Assembly: GCA_900088475.1 (NCBI GenBank)
Contig: FLMG01000833.1
Span: 1 to 63,593 of the forward strand
Direction of reading: 5' to 3'
Source of the DNA: Hyphochytrium catenoides
Lineage: Eukaryota > Protista > Hyphochytriomycota
DNA: 63,593 nucleotides
The notes beneath the pieces were generated by a model. The model saw nothing but the letters and a program-made list of their open reading frames with translations, had not been told where the DNA came from and ran no database searches. Made by a program: the position numbers and the translations under genes. Below, in pieces: positions 53,401 through 63,593 of this stretch. Every line of letters begins with the position of its first letter. Position 1 is the stretch's first letter.

Positions 53401-53709
53401 GTCATGCTTGAGATTTATCGCTATGTAGAGAGGTGCAGAGGAGGGAATTTGAGAGTTTTGAAGGGCAAAAGGCGGAGAAATTCTGAAGTGCTCAAGAAAA
53501 GCCCGCCGCCCCGCCCCGTCCATCTGCCGCTTGTCAGCCCTGGCTGGCCACTTGTGCTGAACTGACTGAGGTGAGCGCTTCAGACGGCAGATCTCAGGCC
53601 TCCATCATTCACTGACTTTCACTCCTGCAGTGCGGAGAAGAATACTGACTTGTGCAACTACGAACGACTCGTAGGGCGTCACCCTTATTATCTACCTTTC
53701 TCTATCACA

Positions 53710-54573
53710 ATGGCTGCAGTTCACTTCAAGGACCTCGGCAAGACTGCCAACGACCTCCTGAATGATGATTATGACTTCTTCCGTAAGATCAAGGTCACCA
53801 CCAAGACCTCCGAGGGTGTTCAGTTTACTACTGAGGGCACCATGACTGGGGAGGGCAGCTCTAAGGCTATCCTTGGAAAGATTAACGCTTCCTTCAAGCA
53901 CTATAGTGGCATCAACTTCAAGAAGCTTCAGTTCACCACTCATGGCCGCTTCATTGGTGAGGCTGAGGTCGCTGATGTCGGTGCCAAGGGACTGAAGGTC
54001 ATCTTCAAGGCTGAGGATGGAGCCAACAAGAACTCAGCCAACAAGAGATACACTGCTTCAGCAAAGTTCGGCATTGACTACCTTACTGGACCTCTGGCGG
54101 CGTCCACAGAGGCCGATTTTGTCAACAGCAAGCTTAATGCGAGCGCTGTCTATGGCTATGAGAGATTCCTAGTCGGTGCTGGCGCCACGGTTGACACCGA
54201 CAAGAGTGCATTGAGCGATGTCAACGTTGGTGTTGGTTACCATGGTCCTGACTACAGAGTGGCAGTGAAGACCGCCAACTCCATGAACGTTGTTCTCGCC
54301 AGCTACGATCATAGATTGAGCCCTGAGGTCCATGCTGCTGCTCGCATCTCACACAACATTGCCAAGCAGACTCAGGTACTTAGCCTTGGCGGCAAGTATA
54401 CTCCTGACCTTGACACCACCCTTAAGGGCAAGGTCGACACCGAGGGTATCGTGTCTCTCGCAGTTATTAGCAGAGTTTCCAAGAACACCAAGCTTTCTCT
54501 CGCAACAGAGATTGATGCCAAGAACCTTGAGGGTGACTCACACAAGTTTGGTGTTGGCATCCAGCTTGGTTAA
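53710..54573 (+). CDS. VDAC: Mitochondrial outer-membrane porin (VDAC); single coding exon, probable 5'-UTR intron 53571-53630
   Basis: MAAVHFKDLGKTANDLLNDDY N-terminal helix; alternating beta strands; GGKYTPDLDTTLKGKVDTEGIVSL; C-terminal HKFGVGIQLG beta signal. Confidence 0.96.
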   Translation: MAAVHFKDLGKTANDLLNDDYDFFRKIKVTTKTSEGVQFTTEGTMTGEGSSKAILGKINASFKHYSGINFKKLQFTTHGRFIGEAEVADVGAKGLKVIFKAEDGANKNSANKRYTASAKFGIDYLTGPLAASTEADFVNSKLNASAVYGYERFLVGAGATVDTDKSALSDVNVGVGYHGPDYRVAVKTANSMNVVLASYDHRLSPEVHAAARISHNIAKQTQVLSLGGKYTPDLDTTLKGKVDTEGIVSLAVISRVSKNTKLSLATEIDAKNLEGDSHKFGVGIQLG

Positions 54574-54891: not shown

Positions 54892-57063
54892 TCATCGAGA
54901 CTTCTCCTTGCTTTCTTCTTCACCTGAGGGCGCGGCTTCTTCTCCTTCTTGCTTACCACCTCCCTGTTAAGTCCAAGTAGGCAGCGTTAAGCGGTAGATG
55001 GTACAAGTGGCACGGTAAGCAAGGCTTGAAAGGAGGGCGTACCGTGCTGTCAGGGTTGCTCATGAAGAGATCCCCTTCGAGGATGCCAACCACTTTGTGC
55101 GCCGTCGGGTGGTCCAGCTGGGACAGGATGATCCGTAGAATCGCTAACAGCGGGACCGATAGAAAAGCACCAGGAGTCGCCCTTGAGGAGAAAGGAGTCT
55201 CAGCATTTTATTTCCCTCAGACACAAGCACTTCCAAAACCCTTACCAGATAATGGTCCAGAACCCCAACGCTAGCATAACGATAATCGGATGCAGATCCA
55301 GCTGGTCACCAAAGTACTAGGAATTTTTACAAAGATAGCTGTCAGCACAGATCACAGCTGTGGCGTGAACCGCTGCCGTCATACCTGAGGCTCGAAGAAA
55401 TTTCCCCATGCGAAGTGAATGGTGCCAGGAAGGGCTATTGCTAATGCCTATATAACAGCGAAATAGTCGGTTAGGGTCTGCTTTGTTAGCCTTTGCCTTC
55501 CCTAGCCATGCTCTTCATGCTCCTTCACGTGCCTCTCATTCATAACCCCCGACTCCTCCGCTCGGACTCACCTGTGTCCACGGACTCAACCTAGGATCAA
55601 AAACAACGAGAGGCAGCGGTGCCAGTGTCGAGAACAGCGCGCCTACATTTGGAATATAGTTGCAAAAGAAGGCTACGACTCCAAATAACCCTGCCACTTG
55701 CACGCCTAGAAGCCACAGAGTCACACCGACAATGAAGCCCATGGCCACACTCAGCATTGTCTTCAATCGAATATAGTTCTGTCAACACTGGTAAGCAAAC
55801 ACCTTACGGCACGCAGTGTTATCGACGACAGCTTTCGGACCTTGACATCCTCAGTGATACGCGGCCAAGCACCCTCTCCCGGTCGAAGAGGGTAGATGAG
55901 GAGGAATAGCAGGAACGCCAGAGTCAAGAAAGTGACTTCTGCAAAGTTCAGCGACCACGAGACGATGCTTCCGGCGATGTTCTTCACGAGAGTGATGAGG
56001 TAGGGTACCAAGTCATTGTCGAAGTCTAAGTCCAGCCTCTGGAGGATTCGCTGTACGGGAGCAACCGGAAACAAGCAGTCATTTAGCTGTCTGCTGCAGA
56101 GGAGTTCTTATGACGGGGAATTATCGTGATACCTTAAGCTCTGCCTGCATCTTCGTAGCCATGTCTTCGTATCTGGGGCGAACAAGCAACAGCCCAAGTC
56201 AGCATGAGAGCAATAAACAAGTGAGATGGGCATGAGAACAGGCGCTCTATCCCACTGGACCAGCAAAGGCGCCGAGAGGCCAAAAGTGACAGATGAGGCA
56301 ATGAAGAGCGTAAAACTAGGCAAGAAGTAGAGTCAGAGCAGAGTTATAGGTGGTAGCTCTCATAGCGAGAGACCGACTTACGGTCCGAGATGGTTTAGCA
56401 GGTACGTAACCTGGTTAGTGACGTAGGCCACAAACACCATGATGACGGAGAGTACCAGGAAGATAGAGACTAGGATAGCTATCCATCGAGGGATTCTCTT
56501 AACGAGTAAGGAGCTGGCCAAGCGTCTAAAGAATCGGTGGAGGTAGCTGCCCGTTTCCGCCTAAGGACCGATACAAGTAGGTCAGCGTTAGGATAAAGTG
56601 GGAGGGCGAACAGAGGGAAAGGGAAGGCTTAAGCAGGGTTTGGCACCTGATTCTGACGAGTAGGTTCTGAGCTTGTGCTCAATAGTGGCACATTCTCTCG
56701 GCTAGAGCCCCTCGTACTATCGCGCTTCTCTTCTTCAAGATCCGCGTCCCTTTCGGGAGAGGCCGGATGTCCTCCCGGTATTGCGTTTCTCCTGATCTTG
56801 TTGATGCAGGAAGCGAGTAGCTGTGGAGCGTCGCAAAGTTGGTCGACCATAGGATTCACCAAGAAGTAGAGTAGAAGTGCGAAGCAGAAGGGTATCAAGA
56901 GCTCGGAGAGCCACTGCAGCAGCTTGCAGAGAGCTACAAAGGCAATGACCATCGCACAGAAGACAAGGGTCTGAATCTCCTTTTCATAGTGCTTATCAAG
57001 CCAAGGCTGTCCGCTTGAACTCTCCGACCGCGCGGTGCGTTGCTGCGAAGGTCGAATAGACAT
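54892..57063 (-). CDS. AI-2E (PerM/TqsA, UPF0118) family transporter, multi-exon
   Basis: LLQWLSELLIPFCFALLLYFLVNPMVD; YIRLKTMLSVAMGFIVGVTLWLLGVQVAGLFGVVAFFCNYIPNVGALFSTLAPLP; GNFFEPQ|YFGDQLDLHPIIVMLALGFWTIIW|..PGAFLSVPLLAILRIIL. Confidence 0.9.
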
Positions 57064-57669
57064 TTAGGGATAATGGGGCTAACGAAGCTACTCAAAAGCG
57101 CAGGCGAGTTCTTTGAGGCACAGCCTGTGAAGATCTGGAGGCTATGCTTTAGCGCTAGCAGCAGATGGTCAGGTATGTAGCTCTGCGAACTGACGACGGC
57201 ACAATAGGGGGTGAACTCTTAGCCATCAAAGCCAGCAAGCACAAGCTGGCAATCTTATCTTAACAGCAATGACTAATGTCGCCTTCTTCAGACGCTAGAA
57301 CTTTATCTGTGTGGGAGCCATGGCTTGGGCCCATCAGGCCACGGCTTGATAGGCTGATAGGGAAGGCAGTTGAAGGGCGAACACAAGGATGGAGCCAGTG
57401 AAGCGTGCAGAGGCACATAAGGACGGTGGATCAGAAGCAGCAGCGTGGTAACTTCTTCAAGCAGAAGCAGAAGAGGAAGTCCAGCAGGGAGGAGAGGAGA
57501 GGAAAGATCTTCTTGGGGGTGGATGTTTGTGCTTAAGAATCAGATCAGATGTGAATCAGTTAGCTAATCATCAATATTGGTAATCACTTGGGCTTTTAAC
57601 CAATGGTTTGAAGTTCGTGGGGAAGGTCAGGTTAGGTTACTGCGAGGCATCCACTTCATCCATCACATC

Positions 57670-58022
57670 ATTCCTCTCTCTCTCTCTCTTCTCTCTCTTG
57701 TTTCATTCTCTCTCTCTCTCTTCTCTCTCTTGTTTCATTCGCTCTCTCTCTCCTCTCTCTTGTTTCATTCTCTCTCTCTCTCTTCTCTCTCTTGTTACAT
57801 TCTCTCTCTCTCTTCTCTCTCTTGTTTCATTCTCTCTCTCTCTCTTCTCTCTCTTGTTTCATTCTCTCTCTCTCTCTCTCTTCTCTTTTTCTCTCTCTCG
57901 TTCTCTCTCTCTCTCTCTTCTTCCTCTTGTCTCCTGTTTTTTTTTCTCTCTCCCTCTCCCTCGCTCTCGCTCGCTCGCCTCTTCTTCCTTTCTCGCTTTG
58001 TTCCTCTCTCTCGCTCACTCTG
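57670..58022. repeat. CT-rich tract containing six copies of a 30-32 bp unit anchored by TTGTTTCATTC
   Basis: Anchors at about 57698, 57730, 57760, 57792 (variant), 57822 and 57854. Confidence 0.9.
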
Positions 58023-58333
58023 ATTCAAGCCATGACATCTCTCCTCCTCTCTTGCAATCAATCACATCCTCTCTGCCTGAACTCATTGCCGCCTCCTCTA
58101 TCATCCGGGCCCCTTCTTCCCTCTTTTTGTCTCTCTCTGCCTTGAACGTCTCCAGCTTTATCAACACTGATTGATGCTGATGATAAACCTCTAATAGTAC
58201 CTTGAGAGAGACAGCGATCCTGCTCTTGCAGTTGACATTCTGCGCTTAACCTCTCCGCGGTCCCAGCCATCGCTCGAGACTCACCCTCTTCCCTCTTTAT
58301 TGATCCCTGTCCGAGCCTCAACCAGTTGGCATC

Positions 58334-61300
58334 ATGACGGCAGACGCAGGCACCTCTGCCGACGCAGCAGCTGTGCCGTCTGGTGCGCCCCTGGCTGGCG
58401 TCAAAAGAGCAAGCGTGGTTGGAATCATCACCGGCAGCGGGCTGTCCAAGTCGTCAATGTTCAGGAATCTCAAAATCACTGTGATAGACACAGAGTTTGG
58501 GCAGGCAAGAGAGGAGTCTTCTCTTTATATCTCCCCTGCTACATCTTCCTCTAACTCTCTGCCTGACATGTGACAGGTCTTGGTGCGGGTTGGCGAGCTG
58601 AACGGCGTGAAGCTAGTCCTTGTGCAGCGACACGCGGCAGACCCTCACAGAGAGTACTGCCAACCGCGGAAGATCAACTTTAAGGCCATCGCTATGGCAA
58701 TGAAGCAGTTGAACTGCGAGTTCGTGGTTGGGACGTACTCTGTGGGCTCCCTGAAGAAAGAGATTCCTATCGGAAGGTAGCGCCTAGTAATGCCTCTCGT
58801 GCTTTCTCCCTCCCGCTCTCTTTCTCTCTCTTTCTCTCTCTTTCTCTCTCTTTCTTCTCTCTCGCTCTCTCTCATCTCTCTCTCTCTGTCTCTCACCCTT
58901 AGTGCTCCCGTTCACTCTATTATTCTCTGCTCTTTATTCCTCTCTTCCTCTCCTTCCTCTCTCTCTCTCATCTCTGCCCGCCTTCATCCCTTTACTTGAG
59001 TCCTGTTCTGCTTCTATCTTTCTCTCTATTGCCCTCTGCTCTTTAACCCGCTCTTTCTCTCCTCTCTCGCTCTCCCTCTCGCTCTCATCTCCGCCCACCC
59101 TGACCCCTTTATTTGAGTCCTGTTCTGCTTCTTTCATCCCTCTATCGCAGTGAGCCCTATGGCCTTTGACCGTTTACCTCATCGTCCTTTATCCTCAGCG
59201 TGGTGGTCCCTCATGACTTTTTCAACCCTTCTGACATGATGCACATCTCTGACGGCTACGACGCGCACTATGTCCCTGGTAAGACCCTTGAGCCCATGCC
59301 AACCCCTACATCTTGCAAGGCTGGACCTTCACTTTTTGGTTACTGAGCCGTCTTTGATGCTTAGTCATCAGTAGCGAGCTACGGGCCCAGATCCTCAATG
59401 TGATCACGCAGCGCTGCGGCATCCAGCCGATCAGCAACGGAGTGTACATGCAAACGTCAGGGCCGAGATTTGAGACGGCTGCAGAGATCCGATTTCTCAG
59501 TTTAGCAGGGGTGAGGTCAAATTGCATCATGTGCCAATAGTTCCTTCGACTGTGCTGACGAAGGTTCTATCCATGTGATAGGATATTGTGGGCATGACAG
59601 GGGCGCATGAGGCCGAACTATTGAACGAGCTGAAGATTCCTTTTGCAATGCTGGCGATGGTTGATAACTTCTGCAATGGCATCGGCTTACCTCTGACGGT
59701 AATGTGAAACTGACTCACAGTCTGGCGGTTCTTGGTGGTAGCCTGTTGTTGTCCTTATGGCGCACTGCATTGCAGCTGGAAGAATTCCATGCGGGGCAGA
59801 AGCTGAATCTGGTCGTCATGGAGACATGCGTGATGCATTTGCTTGCGTACTTTACCGGCGCAGGTGCGATTAGAGGGTAAAGCAGCGATTATAGGGCTCT
59901 TGGATCCCTCTCTTTTTGTCTTCAATGCGTCTACATTTATCCTCCCCCTGCTGCCCTCTAACATTTCCTGCATGCAGAGAGCATTGATATCGAGAGTCCA
60001 TCCACAGCTGACACCATCATTTACGCCAAGTACATTGTGCCAGTAGAGCCAGTTGGGACGGTGCTGCAGGACCACGCGCTAGTCATTAGAGGTGGCAAAA
60101 TCATCGACATCCTGCCTCGTGTGGAAGCCGAAGCGACATACTCAGGTTCTAGCAAAACGAGCGGCTTTTCGAATGCATTGCCTCTTGGCTCACCTCTTCT
60201 TGCCTCCATCAGCTCCTGTCGTCCGACACCTGATGAACCACGTACTGCTCCCCGGGCTAATAAATGGACATACGCACTCGCCTATGACAAACTTACGCGG
60301 CCTGGTGAGGTTCCCTCCTTCTGCGAAAGGATAGTAGCTAGATAAGTGACAGCTCCTTCCTCGTAGTCTGATGACAAGACGTTGATTGAGTGGCTGTCCA
60401 AGCACATCTGGCCTGCAGAAGCACACTTTGTTGCTCCTGATTTTGTTCAGCACGGTACAAGGGTACGTGTGTATAGACAGGGAGTGACTCCGAGGAAATT
60501 GAAACGCTCTCTGTCTCTCAGCTGGCAGCGGCAGAGATGATCAGAAGTGGGACGACTTGCTTCTCCGATATGTACTTCTTCCCTGAAGACTCAGCGACAG
60601 TACTGGAAGAAGTTGGGCTTAGGGGTGTGCTTGGTGAGTCCGCTCGACTATTTAGTATCAACTCTCAATTTCTTTGCCCATTCTTCTTTACGGCCGCCTT
60701 CAGTATGATCTCTGAACACGCTCCTAGGGATCTCCGACTGACGACGACAACTGACTGTGGCGCTTTTCATAGGTCGAATCGTAGTGGAGTTCCCATCTTC
60801 ATGGGCCGCAAACCCCGACGAGTACTTTGCTAGGGGCAAAGAAGTTCAAAACCGGTTTCAGAATTCCGACCTGGTACGGATGATCTTCAATCTCTGTAGC
60901 CTCCCGAAGCCCTCACAATATCTTCCGCGTCTCCCTCATGCCTCCTTTAGGTGACTTTCTCAGTAGCGCCGCATGCTCCGTACACGGTTTCAGATAAGAA
61001 TCTGGCTAGAGTCGCCGCGGTCTCGGCAGAGGAGAAGATACCAATTCACACTCACTTGCATGAGACACAGAGCGAGTGTTGCGACAGTGAGAAACTGGAC
61101 ATCTCCTCCCTTTCGTGCCACAAGAGTGACCAGAAGTGTCGACCCCTGCAGGTAAACTCCGTCAAGCATTAAGGCCAAAAGAAAAGAGAGAGAACTGGAA
61201 GAGAACACGCCTCTGACTGCTTTGAAAGACGGAAGAGGATAGAAGGTGCTTATAGTATGGCGGTAAAGAACTGTGAGAATACCAGGGAGGTAACCTGCTT

Positions 61301-62298
61301 CAGAGAGCTGACTAGCGTCTCTCCATATAGAACTTTCACAGGCTTGGCCTCCTTTCGGAGCGTTTCGTAGGAGCACACATGACTCAACTGACAGCGGAAG
61401 AGATCAAGATCCTGGCATCTACAAAGGCTAATGTGGTCCACTGCCCGTCTTCAAACATGAAGCTCGCTAGCGGTGAGTAGCAGCCATGGACAGTGTCGCT
61501 TAGGCGAACCAAAGCTTTCACAACTCGGCGTCTTTAAGCGTTCATGTCCTATTCATTCCTTCTAACTATTATGTCCGCTTCCTCGTTACATACACCAGGC
61601 TTTTGCCCCGTCAGCGATTTACTGAAGGCTGGTGTCAATGTGTGCATTGGCACGGACGGTACGGCAAGCAACAACACGCTGGACATGTTTGCAGAGATGA
61701 AGCTTGCAGCGCTTCTCGCGAAAGGAGTTTCCAATGATCCAACGTCAGTTCCAGCTGAAGTGGTGAGATGGACTAACCGTTGGTGCACGATCAAAAGGTT
61801 CACAAACATGATCTTTTATGGCCTTAGGCGCTTCGGATGGCAACCATCAATGGTGCCAAAGCTTTAGGGCTTGGAAACAAGGTTGGATCTTTGGAGATAG
61901 GGAAGGTAATGACCGCATGAGGCCATGGGCACGGAAGTGAGGAAAGGAACTATAGACGTGTGCTAATGACCTTCTGCAGCAAGCGGACGTCATTGCCGTG
62001 GATTTAGAGTCGGTCGAGCTGATGCCGTTGTACTGCGTCATTTCCCATTTGGTGTACTCTACCACCCGTGACAAGTAAGTCTCTCTCTTTGTCAACTTTC
62101 GGATCTGTCACACGCTATAATATCTCCTCCAGCGCAGCGCGTCTTAACAGCTGTTCTTTCCACGACAGAGTAAGCCATTCGTGGGTTAATGGTCGCTTGC
62201 TCATGGAGGACCGCAAGTTAACCACGATTGACCTAAAGGCACTGGTAGTAGAGACCCGTGAATGGGAGGAGCGTGTCAGAAAGCACCACGATATTTAA
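58334..62298 (+). CDS. Fusion: N-terminal MTAP/MTIP-family (PNP family 2) nucleoside phosphorylase plus C-terminal MTA/SAH deaminase (MtaD, TRZ/ATZ amidohydrolase), multi-exon
   Basis: Phosphorylase: [49 protein letters not shown]. Deaminase: [101 protein letters not shown]. The junction intron 59864-59977 keeps the frame. Confidence 0.9.
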
Positions 62299-63593
62299 AC
62301 TCTAAGCCATAGAGATGCCAACCACCCTTCTGGGTCACCTGTACCCTCGCTTTGATAAATCTTCACCATCTCCCTCGAGCAGAAGCAGTAAAGATCCATT
62401 CACCCTTCTTGACACTACTTATTCGGTTCTCAACCTCTTTCCTCCCCCACGTTCGTCCGACTCAATCTGGGCTACCAATCTGAAGCCATAGCAATGCTCC
62501 GCTCACTGGGTCATACTGTCAGCAAGAACAGCATCTACTACGGCATGCGGAAGAGATCAACCCTCTTTATGGCAGTCTATTGGTCCGTCATTTGACACTA
62601 AAGGACGCAATTTATGTCTGCTATTGCCGAGAACATGGTTTTATAATAAGCGGACATTGATAGATTATATTTTGTTCCAGCTTACTCAGGAACAGGTGAC
62701 CACTGGCCCCGCTCATGGTTATACAAAGCACCCAGGAAGCAGCATAAGCGCCAACAAGCAACGTAAAAGACAATGCTCCTACAGACTGTACAAGGGCTAT
62801 GCCAACCCTACCGCCAGGTCTCTCCTTTACGAAGGACCTGGGCGACCATGGGGTGTTGTTCATACACCTCAGAAGGTCCCTAAACTACTGTTCTGCGTGC
62901 GTCTTCGCTCCATCCACAACTCGCCGAATCGCTCTGGTGCCCCTACCGTCATCCCATAATCTCAGAGGGACCTGGGGCTGAGGTGATGCCGTGAAGCTCA
63001 GGACTCAAACGCACTGAAAATCTCAGCAGAAGAGCCGCTCAGCCAGCCGCTGCTGTTGATTGAGAGAGATCCTTTCTCATGCGCCAGATGATGGATGAGT
63101 GCACTAGATCGCGGCCAAGGGATGATTGGAGCCGAAAAAGAAACGGACAAGTTGAGATCTGGCAGAAGATAGTACAGAAGAGTTCCTCTATATTCCTTTA
63201 CTTATGCCGTTTACCTCGCCAATCACCTAGCTTCATACCGTTTGCTACCTTATTATACGCCGCCTTTAGGTTAGACGCGGCTTTTGTTCGCATTATAAGC
63301 TTCATTAAAACCTAAAGACTATACCCCTAGATTAGCCGACATAGTTTCCATTGCACGGGATAGGAGGAGTTACCTCCCTTATTATATGCCGCCAGGTTTT
63401 CTTCAACCTCTCGCACTACTGACTCTCCGACCTCCTCATTGGCCAATATTTTGATGTCCATGTTGGTACTACTACTTCAGGACCCGTGATAATAGAGTGC
63501 TATTGAGTATGTAGGAGGAATATTATTATAGTGGTCAGTACTAATGGTGCACACATTGGACAAATGGACATATAAATGGTTTGTACCTTACAA

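What the first reader, a model, noticed from the sequence alone, without database searches (positions are those of the whole stretch)
58334..62298. Single-polypeptide methylthioinosine route: phosphorylase fused to MTA/SAH deaminase
Seen: the last phosphorylase exon (59776-59863, LEEFHAGQK...LLAYFTGA) splices through a phase-1 GT-AG intron (59864-59977) into [27 protein letters not shown]. There is no stop at the junction and no Met to start a separate deaminase gene. Known: Pseudomonas aeruginosa recycles MTA in two steps with separate enzymes, MTA deaminase (MTA to MTI) then MTI phosphorylase (MTI to hypoxanthine + methylthioribose-1-P). Plasmodium uses ADA + PNP, and most eukaryotes use a one-step MTAP or a nucleosidase. 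Inference: this protist encodes both consecutive steps of the deamination-first methionine/purine salvage route in one protein, possibly with substrate channelling. I do not know of a characterised example.
Basis: partly seen in the sequence, partly recalled or inferred. Interest (0 to 1): 0.9.

Follow-up and report, generated by a model that had tools for sequence, protein, structure and literature searches.

The report
Fused MTA deaminase–phosphorylase gene
One 17-exon gene of this protist really does encode a nucleoside phosphorylase joined to a methylthioadenosine deaminase, so two consecutive steps of a methionine and purine recycling route known as separate enzymes in Pseudomonas sit in one protein; the same fusion is already in public databases for other stramenopiles, but I found no study of it.

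Summary
Exons 1-6 (58334-59863) encode an MTAP/PNP-family phosphorylase. They splice in frame through a 114-nt GT-AG phase-1 intron (59864-59977) to exons 7-17 (59978-62298), an MtaD-type MTA/SAH deaminase, giving one 726-aa chain. A 269-nt contig from a public run labelled RNA (the label is the tool's guess) has introns 5 and 6 removed exactly as predicted.

The fusion is not unique to this genome. I fetched 89 other proteins with both domains, always phosphorylase first. They include Hondaea fermentalgiana GBG27968.1, a single uninterrupted 750-codon ORF, as well as Cafeteria roenbergensis and thraustochytrid transcriptomes.

The closest solved structures are the two enzymes of the P. aeruginosa route: MTI phosphorylase 3OZB and the MTA/SAH deaminases 4F0R and 4GBD. 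The phosphorylase carries the 6-oxopurine residues (Glu187, Asn228) where MTAP has Ser and Asp. That fits its acting after deamination.

Both domains branch beside the separate oomycete genes. An AlphaFold2 model of the Hondaea protein shows two folded domains on a disordered linker, which gives no support for channelling.

No paper on the fusion was found. Verdict: a real, conserved, uncharacterised bifunctional enzyme, a new variant of a known pathway that databases list under a name for only one domain.

The parts
58334..62298 (+). Whole coding span of the fusion gene (17 exons, 726 aa)
   Evidence: Gene model built and translated without internal stops. Collinear BLASTP to full-length fusions over residues 26-725.
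58334..58504 (+). Exon 1 (res 1-57), with the start ATG and the glycine-rich GIITGSGL motif at the family's phosphate-binding N-terminus; followed by a GC-AG intron (58505-58576)
   Evidence: Only the GC donor keeps both frame and homology (alignment A1).
58577..58776 (+). Exon 2 (res 58-124): QRH (R75, H76) and SVGSL (S112) phosphate-site motifs
59199..59278 (+). Exon 3 (res 124-151)
59365..59510 (+). Exon 4 (res 151-199): GPRFET with Glu187 (59472-59474)
   Evidence: PF01048 hit, E 1.7e-4
59582..59698 (+). Exon 5 (res 200-238): GMT (M204, T205) and the specificity loop VDNFCNG, D227-N228 at 59663-59668
   Evidence: PF01048 hit, E 7.6e-5. N228 aligns with PaMTIP N223 and with the first D of the MTAP TDYD motif. 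DN is present in 87 of 87 fusions.
59776..59863 (+). Exon 6 (res 239-268): C-terminal helix of the phosphorylase, ending ...LLAYFTGA
   Evidence: Covered by the spliced RNA contig.
59864..59977 (+). Intron 6, 114 nt, GT-AG, phase 1: the junction between the two enzyme domains
   Evidence: Absent from the X6 contig, which 'skips 114, GT..AG'. If it were retained, a stop follows at 59878-59880.
59978..60145 (+). Exon 7 (res 268-324): about 12-residue linker ([12 protein letters not shown]), then the N-terminal beta-sandwich of the deaminase
   Evidence: NagA_N composite-domain hit. Covered as far as 60089 by the RNA contig.
60213..60304 (+). Exon 8 (res 324-354): HxH metal ligands H343 and H345 (60269-60277)
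   Evidence: PF01979 hit
60367..60462 (+). Exon 9 (res 355-386), with invariant E372
60522..60633 (+). Exon 10 (res 387-424)
60773..60873 (+). Exon 11 (res 424-457)
60951..61151 (+). Exon 12 (res 458-524): H492 and E495 (HxxE), plus an insertion of about 11 residues that is absent from the bacterial enzymes
   Evidence: PF01979, E 3.9e-6
61331..61472 (+). Exon 13 (res 525-572): H561
   Evidence: PF01979
61599..61762 (+). Exon 14 (res 572-626): metal-ligand D591 in GTD
   Evidence: PF01979, E 1.1e-8
61828..61905 (+). Exon 15 (res 627-652)
61980..62074 (+). Exon 16 (res 653-684)
62169..62298 (+). Exon 17 (res 684-726) and the stop codon TAA

Best explanation
The gene encodes one bifunctional enzyme. 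The C-terminal amidohydrolase domain is of the MtaD / NF006549 type, with an HxH, HxxE, H, D metal site. I infer that it deaminates 5'-methylthioadenosine (MTA) to 5'-methylthioinosine, and probably also 5'-deoxyadenosine and S-adenosylhomocysteine, as its bacterial relatives do. The N-terminal domain belongs to the trimeric MTAP/PNP family. Its purine pocket is of the 6-oxopurine type (Glu187, Asn228), as in P. aeruginosa MTI phosphorylase. I infer that it then phosphorolyses the inosine derivative to hypoxanthine plus 5-methylthioribose-1-phosphate, or 5-deoxyribose-1-phosphate, which feed methionine salvage and purine salvage.

Shown here: the fused reading frame, its splicing, its conservation, the family assignment of both domains, and the intact catalytic and specificity residues.

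Inferred: the substrates, the order of the two reactions, and any kinetic benefit of fusion. That benefit is more likely proximity and fixed 1:1 stoichiometry than a sealed channel.
For: - Gene model: in frame, with canonical splice sites.
- RNA: a spliced contig crosses the domain junction.
- Other fusions: 89 other proteins have PF01048 and PF01979 in the same order. Among them is the Hondaea gene, one uninterrupted ORF at L001:4001-6253, and MMETSP transcript ORFs marked complete.
- Residue conservation: the window protein keeps 64 of 64 invariant and 52 of 55 near-invariant residues of 35 full-length fusions.
- Deaminase: profile against PDB gives 4F0R (MTA/SAH deaminase) at 2e-180 and 4GBD at 6e-163. 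Orthologues pass the NF006549 cut-off, 575-606 bits against 540.
- Phosphorylase: the best PDB match is 3OZB at 4.7e-45. I identify 3OZB as P. aeruginosa MTI phosphorylase from memory.
- Specificity residues: the N of the DN motif aligns with 3OZB N223 and with the first Asp of the MTAP TDYD motif. GPRFET carries Glu where archaeal MTAPs have Ser.
- Phylogeny: both domains have the same nearest neighbours, the oomycete stand-alone genes. That fits a shared history as a functional pair.
Against: - No enzymology exists for any member of the fusion family.
- The phosphorylase domain of the orthologues scores below the curated NCBIfam cut-offs of both MTI phosphorylase (87-138 bits against 223) and MTAP (125-164 against 275). 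It is therefore a distinct subfamily whose substrate range is only inferred.
- The assignment of PNP Glu201/Asn243 and MTAP Ser178/Asp220 as specificity determinants comes from my memory of the literature. The Guan et al. papers could not be opened.
- RNA support is a single short contig, from a run whose RNA label is a guess and whose organism label differs from that of the genome's own runs.
- The AF2 monomer model shows no fixed interdomain interface (pTM 0.67, linker pLDDT below 50).
Confidence: 0.75

Rival explanations
1. The fusion is real, but its main physiological job is not methionine salvage. Instead it disposes of 5'-deoxyadenosine, the radical-SAM by-product, or carries out general adenosine-to-hypoxanthine purine salvage, with MTA only a side substrate.
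For: Per the review PMC6302742, the related archaeal pair of a 5'-deoxyadenosine deaminase and MtiP is promiscuous and acts on 5'-deoxyadenosine, MTA and other purine nucleosides. NCBIfam also matches the 5'-deoxyadenosine deaminase model NF005557 at 274-326 bits, below its cut-off.
Against: The best-scoring models and structures are the proteobacterial MTA/SAH deaminase group, NF006549, 4F0R and 4GBD. The phosphorylase's nearest solved relatives are 3OZB and MTAPs, not inosine-type PNPs, which score 1e-20 or worse.
Confidence: 0.18
2. The fusion is real, but the two domains do not act consecutively. The phosphorylase cleaves MTA directly, like MTAP, while the deaminase separately detoxifies S-adenosylhomocysteine or adenosine.
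For: Databases name the Hondaea protein 'S-methyl-5'-thioadenosine phosphorylase'. TIGR01694 MTAP is the highest-scoring phosphorylase model in NCBIfam.
Against: The MTAP score is about half the curated cut-off. The adenine-binding Asp-x-Asp of MTAP is replaced by Asn-x-Cys or Asn-x-Ala, and the MTAP Ser by Glu. This holds in all 87 fusions for the DN motif and in all 81 fusions covered at the Glu position.
Confidence: 0.05
3. These are two adjacent genes that a chimeric or read-through transcript, or my gene model, has joined wrongly.
For: Without splicing of intron 6 the phosphorylase frame ends after 6 more codons, so a stand-alone phosphorylase isoform is possible in principle. Only one RNA contig was available.
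Against: The deaminase frame has no in-frame start before M332, 11 residues ahead of the HxH motif. Exact GT-AG removal is seen in RNA. The same fusion occurs in 89 homologues, including an intron-free single ORF in Hondaea.
Confidence: 0.02

Closest known systems
Pseudomonas aeruginosa two-enzyme route: MTA deaminase (PA3170, PDB 4GBD) followed by MTI phosphorylase (PA3004, PDB 3OZB)
   Same: Both enzyme families are the same. The deaminase profile matches 4GBD at 5.6e-163, and the phosphorylase profile has 3OZB as its best solved match. The window Asn228 aligns with 3OZB N223, and both carry Glu in GPR(F/L)ET. I matched PDB codes to gene names from memory.
   Different: In Pseudomonas these are two separate proteins; here they form one polypeptide in a eukaryote. 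The phosphorylase has V-D-N-x-A/C-N-G rather than V-V-N-P-A-A-G and does not reach the NF006599 cut-off. The eukaryotic deaminases carry an insertion of about 11 residues after the HxxE motif.
Methanocaldococcus jannaschii 5'-deoxyadenosine deaminase plus MtiP
   Same: The logic is the same, deaminase first and then a phosphorylase of the MTAP family acting on 6-oxopurine nucleosides (review PMC6302742). Archaeal 'MTAP family purine nucleoside phosphorylases' with the DN motif are among the nearest stand-alone relatives.
   Different: The archaeal enzymes are separate proteins. The archaeal deaminase model NF005557 scores well below its cut-off on the fusion orthologues.
Uncharacterised orthologous fusions: Hondaea fermentalgiana GBG27968.1 / A0A2R5GE13, Cafeteria roenbergensis KAA0156786.1, thraustochytrid MMETSP transcripts
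   Same: Same domain order and same invariant residues. Identity to the window protein is 44-50% across both domains.
   Different: Hondaea encodes the protein in one exon, while the window gene has 16 introns. The database names cover only one domain or say 'hypothetical'.
Oomycete stand-alone pair (e.g. Phytophthora fragariaefolia 263-aa phosphorylase and 470-aa deaminase)
   Same: These are the nearest relatives of both window domains in quick trees (SH-aLRT 98 and 94). Identity is 50% for the phosphorylase and 54% for the deaminase.
   Different: They are separate single-exon genes on different contigs. There is no phosphorylase within 8 kb upstream of the deaminase.
Other methionine-salvage fusions (Tetrahymena MtnAK and MtnBD, plant MtnBC)
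   Same: In these too, consecutive steps of methionine salvage are fused in protists and plants (PMC2759508; PMC6302742).
   Different: They join different enzymes and different steps. Neither paper mentions a phosphorylase-deaminase fusion.
Canonical eukaryotic MTAP (human 1CB0/1CG6)
   Same: Same fold family; the phosphorylase profile matches it at E 4.8e-34.
   Different: MTAP acts in one step on MTA, using Ser178, Asp220 and Asp222. The window protein has Glu187, Asn228 and Cys230 at the aligned positions.

Membership tests
MtaD-type MTA/SAH deaminase (amidohydrolase superfamily; NCBIfam NF006549; PDB 4F0R, 4GBD) | Amidohydro_1 barrel with the metal and catalytic residues HxH, HxxE, His and Asp | tested here: met
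   Window residues H343/H345, H492/E495, H561 and D591 are all present, and the corresponding columns are invariant in 35 fusions. PF01979 hits on exons 8, 12, 13 and 14.
MtaD-type MTA/SAH deaminase (amidohydrolase superfamily; NCBIfam NF006549; PDB 4F0R, 4GBD) | Whole-domain score above the curated NF006549 cut-off of 540 bits | tested here: inconclusive
   Met by four orthologous fusions at 575-606 bits. The spliced window protein could not be handed to that tool by reference. Locally it scores 742.6 bits against the profile of the orthologues' deaminase domains, and the A3 profile that includes its exons matches 4F0R at 2e-180.
MtaD-type MTA/SAH deaminase (amidohydrolase superfamily; NCBIfam NF006549; PDB 4F0R, 4GBD) | Deaminates MTA, SAH or 5'-deoxyadenosine | not testable with these tools
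   Needs an enzyme assay.
S-methyl-5'-thioinosine phosphorylase (PaMTIP type; NF006599; PDB 3OZB) | Trimeric-type PNP/MTAP fold (PF01048) with the phosphate-site motifs RH, S-x-G-S and GMT | tested here: met
   PF01048 hits on exons 4 and 5. R75, H76, S112, M204 and T205 are present, and their columns are invariant in 35 fusions. 3OZB is the best PDB hit, at 4.7e-45. The oligomeric state itself was not tested.
S-methyl-5'-thioinosine phosphorylase (PaMTIP type; NF006599; PDB 3OZB) | 6-oxopurine pocket: Asn at the position of PaMTIP N223 (PNP N243) and Glu in GPRxET (PNP E201) | tested here: met
   N228 and E187 in the window protein. DN occurs in 87 of 87 fusions; GPRFET in 78 of the 81 fusions covered there, and the other three also keep the Glu. 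The role of these residues is taken from the literature as I remember it.
S-methyl-5'-thioinosine phosphorylase (PaMTIP type; NF006599; PDB 3OZB) | Score above the curated NF006599 cut-off of 223 bits | tested here: not met
   Orthologues score 87-138 bits. They are a separate subfamily, sharing the V/I-D-N-x-x-x-G loop with stand-alone eukaryotic, archaeal and bacterial 'MTAP family PNPs'.
S-methyl-5'-thioinosine phosphorylase (PaMTIP type; NF006599; PDB 3OZB) | Phosphorolysis of MTI but not MTA | not testable with these tools
   Needs an enzyme assay.
Canonical MTAP (TIGR01694) | Adenine-binding T-D-Y-D motif (human D220, D222) and Ser in GPRFS(S/T) | tested here: not met
   The window protein has V-D-N-F-C and GPRFET. 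In the alignments the archaeal MTAPs show TDYD and GPRFST at the same columns.
Canonical MTAP (TIGR01694) | Score above the curated cut-off of 274.85 bits | tested here: not met
   Orthologues score 125-164 bits.

The most novel reading that the evidence does not exclude
The fusion marks the deamination-first (MTI) route as the main, ancient way of recycling MTA and 5'-deoxyadenosine in stramenopiles. The same route would then operate, through the stand-alone DN-type phosphorylase, in oomycetes, red algae, Balamuthia and Plasmodiophora, in place of classical MTAP. In addition, the trimer-forming phosphorylase and the dimer-forming deaminase would assemble into a higher-order complex that hands MTI from one site to the other without release.
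Probability: 0.2. Interest if true: 0.7.

Novelty: new variant of a known kind. Interest (0 to 1): 0.55.

Why it matters
As far as I know, the MTA deaminase and MTI phosphorylase route has been studied as an oddity of Pseudomonas and some archaea. Eukaryotes are usually described as using MTAP or a nucleosidase, with Plasmodium using ADA plus PNP.

A conserved natural fusion of exactly these two enzymes is Rosetta-stone evidence that they work as a pair. It also shows that the route is widespread in free-living eukaryotes. Fusions occur in labyrinthulomycetes, a bicosoecid, this organism and many environmental sequences, and the unfused pair occurs in oomycetes.

Three practical points follow:
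- Current annotations name only one domain or neither ('MTAP', 'MTA/SAH deaminase', 'hypothetical') and could be corrected.
- The fusion gives a ready-made single-protein system for converting MTA to hypoxanthine and methylthioribose-1-phosphate.
- Humans have no such deaminase, to my knowledge, so the unfused pair in oomycete plant pathogens and in Pythium insidiosum, and the stand-alone phosphorylase in Balamuthia, may be of interest as selective targets.

Tried and rejected
- **RNA run search.** A search over the whole gene listed no RNA runs. The second search, over any run type, gave DNA runs of the source organism, two soil metagenomes and one run labelled 'RNA?'.
- **Tiny runs.** The three very small runs with the same species label (X7-X9) laid nothing on the gene.
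- **The window's own protein.** It was not found in either protein collection; the best match is 63% on one exon and about 50% over the full length. It could therefore not be scanned whole by the reference-only tools. I worked with exon references, orthologues and local scripts instead.
- **Primary papers.** The Guan et al. 2011 and 2012 papers are not held.
- **Literature searches.** Seven searches for the fusion or for a eukaryotic MTA deaminase found nothing relevant.
- **RabGAP-TBC synteny.** A RabGAP-TBC gene lies near the fusion in Hondaea and near both Phytophthora genes. I rejected this as conserved synteny: the proteins are only 20-25% identical where they align at all, and none is in the window.
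- **Source organism.** The VDAC gene gave no taxonomic resolution in the protein atlas. The MMETSP0961 taxon id resolves to a fungus and is evidently wrong or truncated.
- **Single origin of the fusion.** It could not be shown. Fused and stand-alone rows are interleaved in both quick trees, needing 10 and 16 changes, and many stand-alone rows may be truncated gene calls.
Full report
**Observation**

I rebuilt the gene by hand from the three-frame translation and checked it by script. It has 17 exons between 58334 and 62298 on the + strand. The CDS is 2181 nt and encodes 726 aa with no internal stop. Fifteen of the 16 introns are GT-AG. Intron 1 (58505-58576) is GC-AG, and this is the only solution that keeps both frame and homology.

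Exon 6 ends at 59863 (...LLAYFTGA) and intron 6 is 59864-59977 (114 nt, phase 1). Exon 7 begins at 59978 and, with the G at 59863 that completes the split codon E268, reads [27 protein letters not shown]. Without splicing, the phosphorylase frame would stop at 59878-59880. The deaminase frame has a stop at 59959-59961 and no in-frame ATG before M332 in exon 8, just ahead of the HxH motif. The two ATGs inside the intron are out of frame.

Exon-wise Pfam scans put PF01048 (PNP_UDP_1) on exons 4 and 5 and PF01979 (Amidohydro_1) on exons 8, 12, 13 and 14.

**RNA evidence**

No RNA run was listed for the whole gene. A second search found the organism's own DNA runs, two soil metagenomes, and one run labelled 'RNA?' from a differently coded organism B.

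Laying that run on 58200-62400 gave one 269-nt contig at depth about 5. It covers 59630-59697, skips 77 nt, covers 59775-59859, skips 114 nt with GT..AG ends, and covers 59974-60089. Allowing for the stated boundary ambiguity of 1 and 4 nt, these are introns 5 and 6 exactly, and the piece lengths add to 269 with nothing in between.

The contig has 8 differences from the window. The three that are listed (60015, 60018, 60021) are synonymous third-position changes in my frame. So a close relative or another strain carries exons 5, 6 and 7 joined in frame.

There are three caveats. It is one short contig. The RNA label is the tool's guess. If the run were DNA, the contig would instead mean an intron-less copy, which supports the same reading frame.

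**The fusion elsewhere**

A full HMMER scan with exon 12 found many proteins of 700-795 aa that match at positions about 440-520, which is where exon 12 lies in my model. BLASTP of the spliced protein against them gives single collinear alignments over residues about 26-725 at 42-50% identity.

A profile search with the aligned fusions returned about 75 clusters at 90% identity carrying PF01048 plus PF01979. Among everything fetched, 90 proteins including the window's have both domains, always with the phosphorylase at the N-terminus. Linkers in the full-length ones run from none to about 60 residues.

The members that could be named are:
- Hondaea fermentalgiana GBG27968.1 / UniRef A0A2R5GE13, 750 aa, annotated only as 'S-methyl-5'-thioadenosine phosphorylase'.
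- Cafeteria roenbergensis KAA0156786.1, 774 aa, 'hypothetical protein'.
- MMETSP transcript ORFs, including one from Thraustochytrium sp. LLF1b.

The Hondaea gene is one uninterrupted ORF of 750 codons, L001:4001-6253, so there the fusion needs no splicing at all. In AlphaFold DB the Hondaea protein is its own fold-cluster representative. The window's own protein was in neither collection.

**What the two halves are**

*Deaminase.* A profile of the deaminase halves, with the window exons included, matches solved MTA/SAH deaminases:
- 4F0R/4F0S, 5-methylthioadenosine/S-adenosylhomocysteine deaminase, at 2e-180.
- 4DZH and 4DYK.
- 4GBD at 6e-163.

Tm0936, 8-oxoguanine deaminase, guanine deaminase and atrazine chlorohydrolase are far behind. 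Four orthologues pass the curated cut-off of NCBIfam NF006549, at 575-606 bits against 540.

*Phosphorylase.* A profile of the phosphorylase halves has 3OZB as its best solved match, at 4.7e-45. This entry was deposited as 'methylthioadenosine phosphorylase', and I recall it as the P. aeruginosa MTI phosphorylase of Guan et al. 2011. Archaeal MTAPs follow closely at about 1e-43 to 1e-44. Human MTAP is at 5e-34, and inosine-type PNPs are at 1e-20 or worse. In NCBIfam the domain stays below the cut-offs of both MTAP and MTI phosphorylase, so it is a subfamily of its own.

*Specificity residues.* The alignments are anchored by a conserved Tyr-Ala seven residues upstream. Window Asn228, in V-D-N-F-C-N-G, sits where 3OZB has N223 and where the MTAPs have the first Asp of T-D-Y-D. 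Window Glu187, in GPRFET, sits where 3OZB has Glu (GPRLET) and the MTAPs have Ser (GPRFST).

From established work on human PNP (Glu201, Asn243) and MTAP (Ser178, Asp220), which I cite from memory, these two positions decide between 6-oxo- and 6-aminopurines. The D-N pair is present in 87 of 87 fusion-length proteins and in 118 of 120 nearest stand-alone relatives. GPRFET is present in 78 of the 81 fusions covered at that point, and the other three also keep the Glu.

This confirms the separate first-stage note s1-342040. The window protein keeps all 64 residues that are invariant across 35 full-length fusions, and 52 of 55 near-invariant ones. These include the phosphate-site residues R75, H76, S112, M204 and T205, and the deaminase residues H343, H345, H492, E495, H561 and D591.

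**History**

Stand-alone homologues of the phosphorylase half occur in these groups:
- oomycetes
- red algae, including Porphyridium, where it is annotated 'putative 6-oxopurine nucleoside phosphorylase'
- Balamuthia, annotated 'putative S-methyl-5'-thioinosine phosphorylase'
- Plasmodiophora
- many archaeal and bacterial MAGs

Stand-alone deaminases at about 50% identity occur in oomycetes and in gammaproteobacteria.

In quick maximum-likelihood trees, both window domains are sister to the oomycete stand-alone genes, with SH-aLRT 98 for the phosphorylase and 94 for the deaminase. In Phytophthora fragariaefolia the two genes are single exons on different contigs, and no phosphorylase lies within 8 kb upstream of the deaminase.

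The congruent placement suggests that the source organism is a stramenopile related to oomycetes. It also suggests that the two parts have travelled together and been fused or split more than once. The trees are quick ones, however, and many 'stand-alone' metagenomic rows may be truncated calls. I therefore do not claim a single origin.

**Mechanism**

The most likely reading is a bifunctional enzyme. The C-terminal domain converts MTA to MTI, and probably also converts 5'-deoxyadenosine and SAH. The N-terminal domain converts MTI plus phosphate to hypoxanthine plus methylthioribose-1-phosphate.

The fused frame, the domain families and the residues are shown here. The substrates and the reaction order are inferred.

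An AlphaFold2 model of the Hondaea orthologue has mean pLDDT 90.3 but pTM only 0.67. The linker, residues 270-283, is below pLDDT 50. That means two well-folded domains on a flexible tether with no confident intramolecular interface, so the model gives no support for a channel.

Phosphorylases of this family are trimers. From memory, the related deaminases are dimers. A larger assembly is therefore conceivable but untested.

**Novelty**

The pathway is known as two proteins in P. aeruginosa and in M. jannaschii (review PMC6302742). Fusions of other methionine-salvage steps are known, such as the Tetrahymena and plant cases in PMC2759508.

Seven full-text searches found no paper on a phosphorylase-deaminase fusion or on a eukaryotic MTA deaminase. 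The library lacks most subscription journals, so this is absence of evidence only.

The architecture is already in UniProt, AlphaFold DB, MMETSP and metagenome catalogues, under names for one domain only. I rate it a new variant of a known kind: real, conserved, mis-annotated and uncharacterised, but not categorically new and not unique to this genome.

Whether the genome lacks a canonical MTAP or MTN could not be tested from one window.

Noticed in passing
window 58505-58576: Intron 1 of the fusion gene has a GC-AG boundary (donor GCAAGA). The nearest GT donor would break the frame. No RNA covers it.
   Followed up: partly
window 55536-57063 (- strand): A multi-exon gene for an AI-2E_transport (PF01594) family membrane protein lies head-to-head with the fusion gene, about 1.3 kb from its start. 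Exon pieces hit PF01594 at 2.8e-8 and 1.4e-3. This is first-stage note s1-342041. No PF01594 gene lies within 4 kb of the fusion in Hondaea (L001) or Cafeteria (L002, L003), so the pairing is not conserved there.
   Followed up: partly
window 57600-58000 and 58790-59120: Long CT-rich microsatellite-like tracts lie upstream of the gene and inside the 422-nt intron 2. By eye, intron 2 also holds two similar copies of a short segment ending ...TTGAGTCCTGTTCTGCTTCT (near 58995 and 59112).
   Followed up: no
window 53650-54573 (+): A single-exon ORF of 307 aa is a mitochondrial porin (VDAC, PF01459) by protein-atlas features, score 0.98 on the 288 aa from the first ATG.
   Followed up: partly
window 59864-59880: If intron 6 is retained, the phosphorylase reading frame ends after six extra codons (GAIRG, then stop). 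Intron retention could therefore yield a stand-alone phosphorylase isoform. No read evidence bears on this either way.
   Followed up: no
runs X4 and X5: Two soil metagenomes from 2024 hold 5-11% of the sampled 31-mers of this gene. The organism or a very close relative therefore lives in soil.
   Followed up: no
AlphaFold DB entry A0A1V9ZZH3: This 673-aa protein is named MTA/SAH deaminase, and its deaminase part aligns only from residue 220. It may be another fusion with a shorter N-terminal part. Its organism was not shown.
   Followed up: no
P0154 (MMETSP0961): The TAXON_ID printed for this transcript (87120) resolves to the fungus Rhizopogon burlinghamii. The protein is 82% identical to the Hondaea fusion, so the id is probably truncated or wrong in the source header.
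   Followed up: partly
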